From positions 62,001-126,000 of the forward strand of contig CAJFCJ010000029.1 in NCBI GenBank assembly GCA_904063045.1: DNA of 64,000 nucleotides. The letters run 5' to 3'. How positions within the stretch are numbered: position 1 is the stretch's first letter; each line of letters starts with the position of its first letter. This DNA comes from Dimorphilus gyrociliatus (taxonomy: Eukaryota; Animalia; Annelida). The notes below the pieces were generated by a model. That model was not told where the DNA came from, made no database searches, and was given only the letters and a program-made list of their open reading frames with translations. Below are positions 380-13,618 of the stretch, in pieces. The translations under genes and the position numbers were made by a program.

Positions 380-573
380 TTAATGTTTGACCATTTCTTG
401 TTTTCGTCGAAGATTACGAATTAGGCAGCAGGAGAGAAGAACGCCAGTAGCAATTAATATGCAAAACGTTATTCCCAAGCCAATCATAATGCTTGTGTGC
501 TCTTGAATAAATTCCTTTCCTTTATCGTAACACCCCTACATAAAACCATAAATTAACATTTTCCAATTATATA

Positions 574-609
<36 letters not shown>

Positions 610-1997
610 CAACTCCTTACATCGTAGTATAAAGCTCTGTTTAAAGCACCTTCGTGTTGTCCTGGTGGTCCAATATTCCAAGTCATGCAAACCCTCTCGT
701 TAACAGCTCTATAGTATTCGTCTCTTACGCAACATGATGAAGGTACATAAGGATTTTGTCCCTCTATATTTTATAACGTTTAAAAATATATTTAAAAGCA
801 CATTATACCAATATTAAATTATGTAATAGCATTAATAAAATTGCATGCATCTTATTATATCATCAACATATTTCTTATAATATTAATGCTATTATTAATG
901 AATGATTAAGAATAAGAATCAAATAACATATAGAATCATACCGTGCGAAAACTCTTTTTCAGCAATTGACTTTTTACCAAAGTCTTTAAACCATTTTGAT
1001 TCTCTATAAATGAACCAGCTTTTCGAATTAACGGAACAACAACGAAGCTGAAAAGCGAATTTTTAAAGCTAATCATAAGCGTTTATTAGAATCATACAAG
1101 TTAAAAATCGTAGATATTTGTTTGTATAAAAAATCGATTTGATTGATTATATGGGGAATTTATTTGGTGATGCTACCTGGATTCATATCCAATGCAACTC
1201 TCTCGTACCACAGAGAATTTTGATAGTGACTCCAACTTTTGGGATATATAGAGCAGCATCTTAGCTGTTTTATCATTATAATTATAATTAATGGAAAGGA
1301 ATTGGAATATTACTTAAAAATGTATATCCGAACGATCAATCAAGTTTCATTCGTAAGTTACGTAAATAATAACATTACAGTTTTACAAGAAATAATATTT
1401 AATTCAGTTAGAGTATTGCAAAATACATTACCTTTTCCTGTGCTTTATCCCAAGCCCTTGTCACATCCCTATTGAATTCCTCGTGAAGGTCAACTCCATA
1501 CTGGTCTCTTAAAGTATCTTCCATTATACTTTTGACTTTATTTCCGATTTGAGTACGGAAGACACCAGCCAAAAGTCCTCCAAGAAAGAATCCAACAGCA
1601 ATTACAATCAGACATATACTATAGCTAAAGATTAAGCATTTGTTCTCCATCATGCTTCCAGTGCAACCAAGTAAAGAGATGATAAAAGTTATACATCCTG
1701 TAACTAAAAGAATGTAAGCAGCCACCTCAAACAGAGAACTTCCAATAATATGAGTTAAGTAGTTTCTATCGATAATCAACCATAATCCAACTCCTATAAG
1801 GGTTGCTCCCATACACTATCATGAAGATGAACATTTATTAATAATCTTATTACTAATAATAATAATATAGAGATATCTATTATTTTAATAAATTCGAAAA
1901 AAGACCGAATAGTGATATTTACCCATGCCAGCGACGAAAATATAAATAAAAGATATTTATAAAAACTTATACGCTCATTCGTTTTAGACGGCAACAT
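380..1997 (-). CDS. Tetraspanin 1 (6-Cys EC2, CD151/TSPAN-like), multi-exon with alternative exon 3
   Basis: Exons read manually: 1997-1923, 1815-1432, [1264-1177 or 1047-942], 763-621, 535-380, all with GT-AG and consistent phases. Four TM helices; EC2 motifs LRCCS, YVPSSCC, C, GCY; ends ...RKQEMVKH*. Confidence 0.92.
575..606. repeat. (TA)n microsatellite in the last intron of tetraspanin 1
   Basis: About 16 perfect TA units. Confidence 0.95.
942..1047 (-). CDS. Tetraspanin 1 alternative exon 3b (LRCCSVNSKSWFIYRESKWFKDFGKKSIAEKEFSH)
   Basis: Acceptor ttttcAG at 1049-1048, donor GTatga at 941; 106 nt, phase 0 to phase 1; homologous to exon 3a (LRCCS..KSW..Y..S.W). Confidence 0.85.
1177..1264 (-). 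CDS. Tetraspanin 1 alternative exon 3a (LRCCSIYPKSWSHYQNSLWYERVALDMNP)
   Basis: Acceptor aaacAG at 1266-1265, donor GTagca at 1176; 88 nt, phase 0 to phase 1, no stops. Confidence 0.85.
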
Positions 1998-2157: not shown

Positions 2158-2477
2158 GTATTCCTCTACAAGCTACAGTCTTAAAATGCAACGACATTGT
2201 TTCGGATCTCCATCACTGAAAAGTTCAGGTGTGAATTGAATTATCTACCGAGTGTTTTCGTGCGGTTTTCCGCACAAATCGGCTTTTAAAACGAATTTTC
2301 CGATATTTTAAAGAATACATAAAATATATATTGATCTATTCGATTTTTGATTAAAGTTAGTATATTTAAATTGCCTAAGTAAATCCAAGTTAGCCTCAGA
2401 CGTATACCTGTTAAAGTTATCTCCATTAATCATCTAATATTTTTCATTAATACTATGTTTACTTGCAGCTTTTTAAA

Positions 2478-4642
2478 ATGGGAATCAAAGGAAGAGAGTT
2501 GTCAAATGTGGCTCAATGTGTTCGGTATTTTCTATTGGTAACAAACTTAATTTTTGCCGTAAGTTACATTGTCTTGGTATTTATATAAATAACAATATAA
2601 CCCCCTCCCTTTTTCCAATTTTATAGATGGCTGGAGCGGCAATGATAGGAGTTGGAATATGGCTGGTAGTCGATAGAGACTTTTTAACACCTCTCGTTGA
2701 AATCGACTTGTTTAGGGCTGGCCTATATATGGTTTTAGTTTGCGGTGTTGTCATTTTTGCCGTCTTCTTTCTTGGGTGCTTGGGTGCAATGATGCTGAAA
2801 AAAATATTCCTTATCATATATTTCATTGCTCTTCTTATCATAACGTGCGTCCTGTTTGTTGCTGCAATCTTGGCAATTGTAATGCGAACAAAGTTACGAG
2901 ATGAAATTAAGAATACAATGATGCACAACTTGAAAAAGAGATACGGAGTTGATTTACACATCGCTAAAAATAAAGCTGTTACCTATGGCTTTGACAGGGC
3001 TCAAGAATACGTAATAATGCATTATATTATATTTATTTTATTCTAAACAGAGAAATTAATATCATATCTTAATCTTTTTTACAGCTTAGATGTTGCGCTG
3101 TTGATGATAATGGTTGGGGAAATTATAGAGAATCAGATTGGTGGCGGCAGCAACCGGGACAAGTAGGTGAGTCGAGTAGTTAGAAAAATGATTAATTATT
3201 TATTGCTAATTGATACACTGATTATTCAAACATACAAACAAATTCGTATAAGGTATAAGATGGGGTAAGCACTATACCGATAATGTATCTAGAAATAAGC
3301 ATTTGGATATTAACGTCAATCATAATCATCATAACTAGGTAATGCCAAAGTTTACGTCCCGAAATCTTGCTGCTATAAGGTAGCAGGAGAGGACTATAAT
3401 TCAGATGATTTGAAAAAATGCCAGACACCTGACGGAGGTCCTCCCAGAGATGAACAACCAATTCCCAACAATTTTTTGTATATGAAGGTGACTAACGCTC
3501 AATACATTGTTGCCTACTTTTTCTAGGTGGTGCCGAGCGCGTTAATGTACCGTCTTCGTGCTGTGCAGTGATACTGTACACTGGCCGCTATGTAAACAAG
3601 CAGAAATGCCAAACGTATCAAAATAAAGCGTTACCTGCTGGCGCTCGAGAGAATTATACGTACTATCGTAAGGTACTAAAAGAATGCCCTATTGATTACA
3701 ATATTGCAAAAAAACAAAAAATAAAGCTAGGAATATTTTACAATAAATGCAAAAATAATAATTTCGCTCTCTGTTTCTATTATATTTGCTTGAATGATTT
3801 TTTTGTCAATCAAAAATGAGGTACAAGGGGAATGATCCTTTAATTGTTTTATCAATATTGAAACGTCGACGATTTACAGTGTATCATGAAGGCAAAGATG
3901 AATTCTAATCCATAATTGATTATTCATATGCCTTATTTATAGACGATAAGAATCGTCCACGCGTTCCTGAAAGCTGCTGTTACGTTGATCTATACAAGGA
4001 TACAATTTTGGATAAGGAAAAATGCCAGACATACCAGTTTGGTCCACCTACAAAACCCGGTGGGAGTTCAAATCCCATGGTTTATCATAAGGTACAAAAG
4101 ATGATATACTTTGGAAATGGAGCGTCTATATTTCATATTGCACTGTATTTTCACCTCTTTCATTTTAATATCGCGCTCGGCACATTCTTGCTCCAAGTCA
4201 AATCTATTACCCAGAGAATAATTCAAATAAATGAAAATGATATTTATATGAGATCTAGCATGAAATGATAGGTAATTGATTTGCTGAGGCAAGAATTGTC
4301 AATAGTTTATAGCACCAGCCTTTGTATGTAGATGCTAGTATCTCTCTATTTCGCTTTTCTTGTTTTCCCTTTTACCTAGTGTGATTTAATATTGAAATAG
4401 CTATAAAATACTAATATATTGATCTCTTCCTCAATGAAGGGCTGCTATTCGCGAGCCGTTGAATTCTTAAAGGAACACGTCATCTTTATCATCGGTTTCG
4501 GATTTGGTGTTGCAATAGCATTGGTAAGTACATTCAAAAACATATTAATTGTTCTATAAAACAATTAAAAAAAACCTTTTTTCAATTTCAGATATCTGGA
4601 ATGGTCTTTTCGTTGATTCTTTACTGCTCCCTAGAGTATTAG
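2478..4642 (+). CDS. Tetraspanin 2 (6-Cys EC2), multi-exon with three alternative exon 4 copies
   Basis: Exons: 2478-2558, 2627-3010, 3085-3166, [3339-3487 or 3527-3672 or 3943-4091], 4440-4523, 4592-4642. Four TMs; motifs LRCCA, PxSCC, KC, GCY; ends ...YCSLEY*. Confidence 0.93.
3339..3487 (+). CDS. Tetraspanin 2 alternative exon 4A (GNAKVYVPKSCCYKVAGEDYNSDDLKKCQTPDGGPPRDEQPIPNNFLYMK)
   Basis: aactAG acceptor, AAG|GTgact donor; 149 nt, phase 1 to phase 0, open frame; absent from the ORF track. Confidence 0.85.
3527..3672 (+). CDS. Tetraspanin 2 alternative exon 4B (GGAERVNVPSSCCAVILYTGRYVNKQKCQTYQNKALPAGARENYTYYRK)
   Basis: ttttctAG acceptor, AAG|GTacta donor; 146 nt, phase 1 to phase 0. 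Confidence 0.85.
3943..4091 (+). CDS. Tetraspanin 2 alternative exon 4C (DDKNRPRVPESCCYVDLYKDTILDKEKCQTYQFGPPTKPGGSSNPMVYHK)
   Basis: ttatAG acceptor, AAG|GTacaa donor; 149 nt, phase 1 to phase 0. Confidence 0.85.
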
Positions 4643-6036: not shown

Positions 6037-6971
6037 ATGTGGTCTACGTCATTCGACGCTCTAGCTGCAATGGTTCGACATAAAAAAAAATGGAAACTGA
6101 AGAAAGTAGAAGAATTACCAGGCTATCTTCAAGATAATTTATTCTTAAAAAGGCATCATAGACCAGAATTGAAGTCTGTTAAAGAATGTATCCGTTCAAT
6201 GTTCATGCTTCATTCTGAAACTGGAAATATCTGGACTCATTTAATTGCAGCAGTAATAATGGTAATTCTCTTCATTCGTCATTTAAATAGCTCAGAAAGT
6301 TTCCAAGAATCTTTGTTCTTTTCTCTCTTCTTCCTTGGAAATATTGGATGTATGACTATATCAAGTACCTATCATACGTTTATTTGCTATTCCAAGCAAG
6401 TTTGCAGATTCTTGGCAAAGATGGATTATTGCGGCATCATAAGCATGACTATACTCTCCTGGTCTCCTTTCGTTTATTATTGCTTTTGTTATTGCTCATT
6501 AACAGTGAAGATCTATTTCTTCTTTATCGTATTGGTTCTTTTGTTAGGGTTGACAATGGTTATACGAGAAGATTTCCTGAGACCGCAGGGACACACCAAA
6601 AGAATATCAGTGTTTTTTTCGATTGGAGCAGTATCATTCGTATTCGCTGGTCACTTCCTACTCGCAGAAGCTATGTATGACTCAAAAGCAGCTCAGGTCT
6701 TTGCTTATTGTCTTCCAATGGGTTCTTTATACTTTGGTGGTGGATTTTTATACGCACTGAAATTCCCCGAAAGAAAATTCCCAGGAAAATGCGATTTATT
6801 TGTAAGTAATTGACTTCTCTATTATTAACATTTCTTGTCTTATAATTTCCAATACAGTTTCAAAGTCATCAGATAATGCACGTTTTATCTCTGTTAGGAA
6901 GTCTCCTTTGCTACTATTCCGCGTTATACTTGAAGCATTATAGGACTGTTATTAAGGGTAACTGCCGTTAA
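6037..6971 (+). CDS. PAQR family / adiponectin-receptor-like 7-TM protein
   Basis: Exons 6037-6801 and 6858-6971 (56-nt intron). Hallmark motifs ETGNIWTH, SSTYH, MDYCGI, PERKFPGKCD and FQSHQIMH (Zn-binding His residues retained). Confidence 0.92.
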
Positions 6972-7516
6972 CTGCTTGAAAAATCGATGTACTCATGAAT
7001 ATGATCGGTATAAAATAATTTTAATTTAAAAACACATCGGTCATTAAACTTATTCAAATGTAATCAATAAAAATAATGTTCATGTTTTTCTCTATAAACT
7101 AATAAAATCTTCTCATAAAACTAAAGGTTCTCGTTAAAATATGTTAATTGTATATTATATTATTACGTAATTTTAAAATTTCCCGCCGAAAGATACATTA
7201 ATATTCATATTTTTTTCTCACTCTTTTTTCGTATAGAAGTCATTATGACTTGATTTCTTATCAAAACTATATGACTGAACACTTCCCATTGATAGTAATT
7301 TTTCAGCGTAATGAATACGATCAAACCGTTGAAATTATATTTTAAGAGAATAGATCGAAAAACGAAAAAAGACAGTTCACCGCTTTTCAATATGTAATAG
7401 AATGTATCGAGATATAGATGACGCCACCAACAAGGTCAGCACTTGGAATTTTCCTCTCGTATTTAATCATTGGGAAACTATAAGGCGTGCTCAGTCATTT
7501 AATCGGTAAAAAAAGC

Positions 7517-13195: not shown

Positions 13196-13618
<423 letters not shown>

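What the first reader, a model, noticed from the sequence alone, without database searches (positions are those of the whole stretch)
942..1264. Tetraspanin 1 has a duplicated, mutually exclusive 'CC' exon in its large extracellular loop
Seen: two homologous exons, 3a (LRCCSIYPKSWSHYQNSLWY...) and 3b (LRCCSVNSKSWFIYRESKWF...). Each has good splice sites and runs phase 0 to phase 1. Including both, or skipping both, shifts the frame, so only one-of-two splicing gives protein. Established: this EC2 segment forms the base of the partner-binding variable head. Inference: two isoforms with different partner specificity. Neither exon appears in the ORF track.
Basis: partly seen in the sequence, partly recalled or inferred. 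Interest (0 to 1): 0.8.

Follow-up and report, generated by a model that had tools for sequence, protein, structure and literature searches.

The report
Two-way swappable exon in worm tetraspanin
A membrane-organiser gene (a tetraspanin) of a small annelid worm has two tandem copies of one exon; RNA shows each message uses exactly one, giving two proteins that differ only in part of the outward-facing loop, and the same exon pair is in the distant annelid Capitella, so it is old and kept.

Summary
On the minus strand lies a six-exon tetraspanin gene. It has two tandem homologous 'LRCCS' exons: 3a (1264-1177, 88 nt) and 3b (1047-942, 106 nt). Both run from phase 0 to phase 1.

Assembled RNA contigs from three studies show all four predicted junctions: 1432|1264, 1432|1047, 1177|763 and 942|763. 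No 3a-3b joint and no skip-both joint was seen. Either of those would hit a stop codon within 6 or 13 codons.

The pair is not private to this genome:
- The Capitella teleta ortholog has the same two exons in the same order and phase. The upstream one is missing from its gene model.
- A second, unnamed annelid expresses two proteins that are identical except for this exon.
- Annelid transcripts fall into a short 'A' class and a long 'B' class.
- Owenia, a brachiopod, a chiton and a bivalve have one copy in their closest genes.

3b is clearly B-type. 3a is very diverged, and its A-type orthology rests mainly on position, length and its ending.

Different partner binding by the two isoforms remains an inference. 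I found no paper describing such exons in tetraspanins. Earlier scan notes report this same stretch, a three-way exon set in the neighbouring paralog, and a TspanC8 case elsewhere in this genome. Verdict: a new member of a known kind.

The parts
1923..1997 (-). Exon 1 coding part (ATG at 1997; 25 codons MLPSK...SSLAW, phase 0 end), donor GT at 1922
   Evidence: Sequence and script; joint 1815|1923 in X1 and X4 contigs
1432..1815 (-). Exon 2 (128 codons): end of TM1, small loop, TM2, TM3 and EC2 helices A-B, ending ...AWDKAQEK in phase 0
   Evidence: Translation; Pfam PF00335 Tetraspanin 75.9 bits against a cut-off of 32.1; 53% identical to annelid orthologs
1265..1431 (-). Intron upstream of exon 3a (167 nt)
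   Evidence: Joints 1264|1432 and 1047|1432
1177..1264 (-). Alternative exon 3a, short 'A-type' (88 nt, phase 0 to 1; LRCCS...LDMNP)
   Evidence: Spliced to exon 4 in X2 and X4 and to exon 2 in X4. Upstream position, short length and ...NP + split G ending match Capitella copy A. HMM preference for A is only +2.5 bits
1048..1176 (-). Intron between the two alternative exons (129 nt)
   Evidence: no contig joins 1177 to 1047
942..1047 (-). Alternative exon 3b, long 'B-type' (106 nt, phase 0 to 1; LRCCS...WFKDFG...EFSH)
   Evidence: Spliced to exons 2 and 4 in X1, X3 and X4. B-type HMM 45.3 bits against A-type 30.5
764..941 (-). Intron downstream of exon 3b (178 nt)
   Evidence: Joints 763|942 and 763|1177
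621..763 (-). Exon 4 (143 nt, phase 1 to 0): split codon E, then GQNPYVPSSCC...C...GPPG...LYYD. This is the rest of the variable EC2 subdomain, with 3 conserved Cys
   Evidence: 57-60% identical to annelid orthologs; contigs
380..535 (-). Exon 5 coding part (GCYDKG..., TM4, short tail; stop TAA at 382-380). The 3' UTR runs on to at least 200
   Evidence: contigs X2 and X4 cover 200-534

Best explanation
This is a pair of mutually exclusive exons that arose by an old tandem exon duplication in an annelid tetraspanin gene. Every productive mRNA takes exon 3a or exon 3b between constant exons 2 and 4. The two proteins (about 281 and 287 residues, by summing exon lengths) are identical in all four membrane helices and in the rest of the large extracellular loop. 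They differ only in 28-34 residues that start at the CC motif after helix B and form the first half of the variable head of EC2.

Shown: the two exons, their shared phase, all four junctions in RNA contigs, premature stops if both or neither is used, and the same two-exon arrangement in Capitella. Also shown: both isoforms in a second annelid, and A-type and B-type transcripts across many annelids.

Inferred: exclusivity is enforced at least by reading frame, with nonsense-mediated decay removing wrong combinations. I found no convincing RNA docking/selector structure, and the 129-nt middle intron is too long for steric exclusion. Also inferred: the choice is regulated, and the two heads differ in lateral or trans partner binding. 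In models of a relative's two natural isoforms, the A form has a short compact connection. The B form adds about 9 residues, with a low-confidence loop and an extra short helix.
For: Gene model and phases.

RNA: joints 763|942 and 1047|1432 (X1, X3, X4), 763|1177 (X2, X4), 1264|1432 (X4) and 1815|1923 (X1, X4). One 583-nt X1 contig runs exon 5-4-3b-2. X4 matches the window in all five laid contigs (99% or more alike, no differing letters listed). It holds the two forms as separate short contigs of 145 and 163 nt with identical flanks. X2 and X3 come from one study and carry a 95-97% identical lineage; they show the 3a form and the 3b form respectively. Of the 19 listed differences in that lineage, 17 are synonymous.

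Frame: stops.

Orthology: every constant exon hits the same annelid clade best, at 53% for exon 2 and 57-60% for exon 4. That clade includes Capitella CAPTEDRAFT_21307.

Capitella locus L001 has copy A at 6904-6985 (82 nt...QVWNP) and copy B at 7250-7349 (100 nt...RMSH), each with AG/GT and phase 0 to 1.

P0168 (A) and P0216 (B) are 100% identical outside the swapped exon.

Among the representatives of this annelid clade, 5 carry an A-type exon and about 30 a B-type exon.

Old age: in the window pair 7 of 11 identical residues use different codons, including an Arg AGA/CGT switch; the Capitella pair has a Ser TCA/AGC switch.

Models: pLDDT 93.3 (A) and 92.5 (B), with the B-specific block 171-180 at 63. 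The fold matches solved tetraspanins.
Against: All RNA evidence is assembled contigs, not raw reads. Rare double-inclusion or skipped forms, relative usage, strand and tissue or sex specificity cannot be read.

Exon 3a is extremely diverged. In a tree of exon peptides it sits on a very long branch away from the other A exons. It scores only 20.9 bits on the A profile against 18.4 on the B profile. Its orthology to annelid A exons therefore rests mainly on position, length class and the NP + split-G ending.

One of the two listed differences in 3a between lineages is non-synonymous (S to N). That is too little data to show purifying selection on 3a within this lineage.

The B-specific tail is acidic in most annelids but lysine-rich here, so a single conserved binding chemistry is not evident.

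No binding partner was tested. The organism name (Dimorphilus gyrociliatus) comes from an earlier AI note and was not verified independently.
Confidence: 0.85

Rival explanations
1. Exon 3b is the working exon. Exon 3a is a decaying duplicate whose inclusion is splicing noise or gives a poorly functional protein.
For: 3a is far more diverged than 3b: best match to anything is about 31 bits, it has a very long branch, and it has weak splice signals. Most annelid transcript representatives are B-type. X1 and X3 show only the 3b form.
Against: 3a keeps an open frame, the right phase, both Cys, the W..Y..S.W core and AG/GT. It is spliced correctly to both neighbours. In X4 its contig depth (1282) is no lower than that of 3b (1076), although the tool warns that depth is crude. 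The diverged lineage in X2 also uses it. A-type exons are conserved and expressed in at least six other annelids.
Confidence: 0.07
2. The pair is real, but the window's 3a is not the ortholog of the annelid A exon. The ancestral A was lost, and 3a is a later re-duplication in the dinophilid lineage.
For: 3a and 3b share lineage-specific residues (CCS and KSW, where other annelids have CC[AG] and [NE]GW). The A-profile preference is only +2.5 bits. The tree does not place 3a with the A exons.
Against: It has the same upstream position, the same short length class and the same ...NP + split-G ending as Capitella A and the other A exons. Synonymous sites between 3a and 3b are saturated (4 identical codons among 11 identical residues), so any re-duplication would also be old. 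Within-species similarity of A and B is also seen in Capitella (17/21 residues, yet only 10 of those 17 with the same codon). This fits shared protein-level constraint rather than recent copying.
Confidence: 0.12
3. The main role is quantitative. Frame-shifting combinations (both or neither exon) are made on purpose and destroyed by nonsense-mediated decay, so the exon pair tunes expression rather than making two functional proteins.
For: Both wrong combinations give early stops. Contigs drop rare variants, so such forms cannot be excluded.
Against: No such joint appears in any of four runs. Both exon classes keep conserved, class-specific peptide motifs across annelids, which a pure on/off switch would not need.
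Confidence: 0.04

Closest known systems
Mutually exclusive exons derived from tandem exon duplication (e.g. human tandem duplicated exon substitutions, PMC9741552; 29 C. elegans clusters, PMC4165533; Drosophila Dscam1)
   Same: Adjacent homologous exons of similar length and equal phase, with one and only one in each mRNA. The isoforms differ in one homologous segment. The duplication is ancient and conserved.
   Different: The gene family. The word tetraspanin (also TSPAN, CD151) does not occur in the main text of the catalogues I checked (supplementary gene tables not opened), and full-text searches gave no paper on such exons in a tetraspanin. No competing RNA structure is evident here. Frame incompatibility is the only enforcing feature shown.
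Capitella teleta tetraspanin CAPTEDRAFT_21307 (P0169) and its annelid clade
   Same: Ortholog by best hits of every constant exon. Same intron positions around the CC exon. Same A-then-B exon pair with phase 0 to 1.
   Different: The public Capitella model contains only copy B; copy A (L001:6904-6985) is unannotated. Capitella has CCA where the window has CCS. Its A and B are much more alike (17/21 residues) than the window's (11/21).
CD151-like six-cysteine tetraspanins ('CD151 antigen(-like)' is NCBI's name for the Lingula, Liolophura and Crassostrea relatives)
   Same: Four membrane helices. EC2 has CC, PxSCC, C and GC cysteines. It also has the CCx....W..Y..S.W stretch, which from my own recollection of the human CD151 sequence resembles its CCG-to-PDSCC stretch; I did not align it here.
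   Different: In those genomes' closest genes the CC exon is single. No QRD-like integrin motif is evident in exon 4. Orthology to vertebrate CD151 was not tested. The best solved relatives by sequence are CD53, CD81 and CD9.
Neighbouring head-to-head paralog in this window (about 2479-4630, plus strand), reported by an earlier scan note (s1-080400) to have a three-way exon choice
   Same: Same family and same exon-intron layout. It also diversifies EC2 by tandem exon copies.
   Different: The paralog has a single CC exon (3085-3167). It multiplies the next exon, which carries PxSCC and the cysteine after it. I did not test its RNA.

Membership tests
Tetraspanin (Pfam PF00335) | Significant match to the family profile | tested here: met
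   Exon 2 alone scores 75.9 bits against a cut-off of 32.1. Exon 5 scores 19.8 bits, below the cut-off on its own. Full-length orthologs P0168 and P0216 score about 150 bits.
Tetraspanin (Pfam PF00335) | Four transmembrane helices with a small and a large extracellular loop | tested here: met
   Hydrophobic stretches are present in exons 1-2 (TM1-3) and exon 5 (TM4). Models of the orthologs' two isoforms show four long helices and match solved tetraspanins. The window's own spliced protein was not assembled or folded.
Tetraspanin (Pfam PF00335) | CCG motif and further conserved EC2 cysteines (PxSCC, C, GC) | tested here: met
   CC is present in both 3a and 3b. The third residue is S here and A or G in relatives, so the G is not strict in this clade. 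PSSCC and one Cys are in exon 4 and GC is in exon 5. The Cys columns are invariant in a 78-sequence alignment.
Mutually exclusive exon pair from tandem duplication | Two adjacent exons that are homologous, with the same phase at both ends | tested here: met
   11/21 identical residues, E = 4e-8. Lengths are 88 and 106 nt, both 1 mod 3, phase 0 to 1.
Mutually exclusive exon pair from tandem duplication | Each alternative exon is spliced to both shared flanking exons | tested here: met
   All four joints are in RNA contigs. 1264|1432 is seen in one run only (X4).
Mutually exclusive exon pair from tandem duplication | Never both and never neither in productive mRNA | tested here: inconclusive
   No 1177|1047 or 763|1432 joint appears in four runs, and either would give an early stop. 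But only contigs were available, and contigs drop rare forms.
Mutually exclusive exon pair from tandem duplication | Both copies kept in related species | tested here: met
   Capitella DNA has both copies. P0168 and P0216 differ only in this exon. A and B classes occur across annelid transcripts. There is a single copy in Owenia, Lingula, Liolophura and Solemya.
Structure-guided exon choice (docking/selector RNA pairing, as in Dscam1 or ATE1) | Conserved competing intronic base pairing | tested here: not met
   Only short AT-rich inverted repeats of 70-77% complementarity were found. Folding the whole cluster gives z = -1.67. No intron sequence from close relatives was available to test conservation.
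Vertebrate CD151 orthologs | Orthology by phylogeny and the integrin-binding QRD site | not tested
   Only NCBI's names for invertebrate relatives point this way. No QRD is visible in exon 4.

The most novel reading that the evidence does not exclude
Annelid tetraspanins may use exon cassettes in EC2 as a general route to diversify partner recognition, in place of the gene-family expansion seen in vertebrates. Earlier scan notes attribute tandem alternative EC2 exons to three tetraspanin genes in this compact genome. Only this one was checked here against RNA; for the neighbouring paralog I only read the exon copies in the sequence. In this gene the A/B pair dates to before the split of Dinophiliformia from Sedentaria + Errantia. 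Within each species the two exons also track each other at the protein level while differing at synonymous sites. That would mean both heads co-evolve with the same constant surface or partner. The A/B choice could then be a regulated (sex-, stage- or tissue-specific) switch of tetraspanin-web partners.
Probability: 0.3. Interest if true: 0.65.

Novelty: new member of a known kind. Interest (0 to 1): 0.5.

Why it matters
Tetraspanins organise membrane partners such as integrins, proteases and Ig-family proteins, largely through the variable head of EC2. In well-studied animals this head is diversified by having many genes. Here one gene makes two heads by exon choice. The arrangement has been kept since before this worm's lineage and Capitella's separated, which argues that both heads are needed.

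This gives a clean natural experiment: two proteins identical except for about 30 exposed residues. It can be used to map what that part of EC2 binds. It also corrects a public gene model, because the Capitella model lacks exon A, and it shows that annotation pipelines miss such exons.

Tried and rejected
1. Docking/selector RNA structures. An inverted-repeat scan and a fold of the 668-nt cluster gave only AT-rich weak pairings and z = -1.67. Not supported.
2. Steric exclusion. The middle intron is 129 nt. The median intron reported for D. gyrociliatus is 66 bp (PMC7854359), so it is not too short to splice.
3. Placing 3a by tree. Too few columns, and 3a is on a very long branch. Profile scoring favours A only weakly.
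4. Finding the window's own annotated protein and the organism name in the protein collections. Three searches found relatives only, so I could not see which isoform the public annotation carries.
5. Two metagenomic genomic contigs of other annelids (L006, L007). They end before the CC exon, so they gave no extra genomes.
6. An exact look-up of Owenia P0202 failed. Its sister entry P0262 worked.
7. Selection within the lineage. Only two listed differences fall in 3a and none in 3b, too few for dN/dS.
8. Contig depths in X4 (3a 1282, 3b 1076, exon 2 1117, exons 4-5 565) do not add up as simple isoform shares. I did not interpret them.
9. Literature. Three full-text searches and three catalogue papers gave no tetraspanin case.

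Exons were searched one by one by reference, and natural full-length isoforms of a relative (P0168, P0216) were folded instead.

Full report
**What is in the sequence**

The window is AT-rich eukaryotic DNA, about 30-40% G+C. On the minus strand between 1997 and 380 lies a tetraspanin gene with six coding exons:
- Exon 1: 1997-1923, 25 codons.
- Exon 2: 1815-1432, 128 codons, ending ...AWDKAQEK in phase 0.
- Exon 3a: 1264-1177.
- Exon 3b: 1047-942.
- Exon 4: 763-621. It starts with two bases that complete a split codon, then reads GQNPYVPSSCC...
- Exon 5: 535-380, reading GCYDKG..., with the last membrane helix and the stop.

Exon 2 alone passes the Pfam tetraspanin threshold, 75.9 bits against 32.1.

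Exons 3a and 3b both begin LRCCS and share the core KSW..Y..S.W. They match at 11 of 21 residues, E = 4e-8. They are 88 and 106 nt long, so each takes the frame from phase 0 to phase 1. Both have AG/GT borders, with weaker signals at 3a. Of the 11 shared residues only 4 use the same codon, two of them Trp, and Arg is AGA in one and CGT in the other. The copies are therefore old, not recent.

**Do the messages use one or the other?**

One search for public runs found four that hold this stretch, from three studies. All are kept as assembled contigs.
- 763|942 and 1047|1432 in X1, X3 and X4.
- 763|1177 in X2 and X4.
- 1264|1432 in X4.
- In addition, 1815|1923.

One X1 contig of 583 nt runs through exon 5, exon 4, 3b and exon 2. 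X4 matches the window in all five contigs laid (99% or more alike, no differing letters listed). It holds the two forms as separate short contigs of 145 and 163 nt with the same 28-29-nt flanks, as an assembler produces when two paths join the same neighbours.

X2 and X3 come from one study and share variants, so they carry a related lineage, 95-97% identical. X2 has the 3a form and X3 has the 3b form. Of that lineage's 19 listed differences, 17 are synonymous.

No contig joins 3a to 3b or exon 2 to exon 4. Such products would stop after 5 further codons in 3b, or at codon 13 of exon 4.

Limits: contigs drop rare forms. They give no usable quantities, strand or tissue information.

**Is it conserved?**

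A full-library profile search with exon 2 found no identical protein. It did find an annelid clade at about 50% identity. Each constant exon, searched on its own, hits that same clade best: 53% for exon 2 and 57-60% for exon 4. The clade contains Capitella teleta CAPTEDRAFT_21307.

In the Capitella locus (L001) the annotated CC exon at 7250-7349 ends ...RMSH. It is preceded, 264 nt upstream, by a second, unannotated CC exon at 6904-6985 ending ...QVWNP. That exon has AG/GT borders and the same phase. The order (short exon first, long exon second) and the endings match the window: NP plus a split G for the first exon, SH plus a split G for the second.

Proteins from annelid transcript assemblies fall into two classes at this exon:
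- A short A class ending QVW[NT]P, in 5 cluster representatives.
- A long B class with WF..FG followed by a mostly acidic tail, in about 30 representatives.

In one 90% cluster, P0168 (A) and P0216 (B) are 100% identical over about 200 residues before and 94 residues after the exon, and differ only there. A second annelid therefore expresses both isoforms.

Profile scoring puts 3b firmly in class B, 45.3 against 30.5 bits. It puts 3a only weakly in class A, 20.9 against 18.4. In a tree of the exon peptides 3a sits on a very long branch apart from the other A exons. The identity of 3a as the A exon thus rests mainly on position, length class and ending.

The closest genes of Owenia fusiformis, Lingula, the chiton Liolophura and the bivalve Solemya each have a single CC exon by motif scan and tblastn.

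An earlier scan note says the window is Dimorphilus gyrociliatus. I could not verify this independently. If it is right, published phylogenomics place its clade as sister to Sedentaria + Errantia (PMC7854359). The duplication would then predate that split. It would also postdate the divergence from Owenia, provided the Owenia gene is the ortholog.

**A side observation on co-variation**

Within Capitella, A and B share 17 of the first 21 residues, but only 10 of those 17 use the same codon. Serine is TCA in one copy and AGC in the other. Orthologous exons between the two species share only 9-11 of 21 residues. The window's two exons likewise share CCS and KSW, where other annelids have CC[AG] and [NE]GW. 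This fits shared protein-level constraint on both alternative exons within a lineage. Old partial gene conversion cannot be excluded.

**Where the segment sits**

Instead I folded the two natural isoforms of the relative, using a 78-sequence alignment. Both models are confident, pLDDT 93.3 and 92.5, and both match solved tetraspanins such as the uroplakins, CD53, TSPAN15, CD9 and CD81.

The alternative segment starts at the last turn of EC2 helix B. It contains the two Cys of the CC motif and two short helices. It ends a few residues before the PxSCC motif, so it forms the first half of the variable head. The B form is 9 residues longer, with a low-confidence loop (block mean 63) and an extra short helix.

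From general knowledge of the family (CD81, CD9, CD151, TSPAN15), the variable head carries partner contacts. A difference in partner binding is therefore plausible, but it was not tested here.

**Mechanism of exclusivity**

Frame incompatibility is shown. I found no convincing competing RNA pairing. The 129-nt middle intron is about twice the reported median intron of this species, so steric exclusion is unlikely. The three introns of the cluster (167, 129 and 178 nt) are all longer than that median. This may reflect regulatory content, but that is only a hint.

**Novelty**

Full-text searches for tetraspanin together with mutually exclusive or duplicated exons returned nothing relevant. Human and C. 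elegans catalogues do not mention tetraspanins in their main texts. The Dimorphilus genome paper does not mention tetraspanins.

The mechanism is a textbook kind. The gene family, the position in EC2 and the annelid-wide conservation appear to be undescribed.

Earlier notes of this scan cover the same stretch read in another window (s1-081506). They also cover a three-way exon set in the head-to-head paralog (s1-080400) and a TspanC8 case on another piece of this genome (s1-081142).

**Verdict**

The functional claim is plausible but untested. This is a new member of a known kind, of moderate interest.

Noticed in passing
L001:6904-6985 (Capitella teleta KB305005.1, reversed): An intact A-type CC exon (82 nt, AG/GT, ...QVWNP) lies 264 nt upstream of the annotated CC exon. 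It is missing from the public gene model CAPTEDRAFT_21307.
   Followed up: yes
window 2479-4630 (+): A head-to-head tetraspanin paralog has the same exon layout. It has a single CC exon (3085-3167) but three homologous copies of the next exon (about 3339-3489, 3528-3673 and 3943-4092). This is the subject of another scan note.
   Followed up: partly
window 2207-2470: Contigs in X1 and X4 end at 2228 or 2355 and continue with the sequence that starts at about 2470. Both places have GT donors. The plus-strand paralog therefore seems to have an upstream non-coding exon with two alternative donors, overlapping or abutting the 5' end of the minus-strand gene. This suggests a shared bidirectional promoter region.
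   Followed up: partly
L008:10773-10886 and 13232-13324 (Owenia fusiformis): The closest Owenia gene has one CC exon but two alternative last coding exons for the end of TM4 and the tail. They are annotated as two proteins (P0202, P0262) that differ only in the last 14 residues or so.
   Followed up: partly
window 565-617: A (TA)n microsatellite lies in the intron between exons 4 and 5. The read tool skipped it as a repeat.
   Followed up: no
L005:3001-3858 (Crassostrea virginica): The oyster 'CD151 antigen-like' relative P0152 is encoded without introns, which looks like a retrocopy.
   Followed up: no
runs X1, X2, X3 (coral and marine metatranscriptomes): Spliced transcripts of this worm gene (X1, 99% or more identical) and of a 95-97% identical lineage (X2, X3) turn up in environmental RNA libraries. 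Dinophilid-like worms therefore appear to be present in those samples.
   Followed up: no
L001 A/B exons and window 3a/3b: Within a species the two alternative exons are more alike in protein than orthologous exons are between species (17/21 in Capitella against 9-11/21 across species), while differing at many synonymous sites. This suggests lineage-specific co-variation of the two heads.
   Followed up: partly
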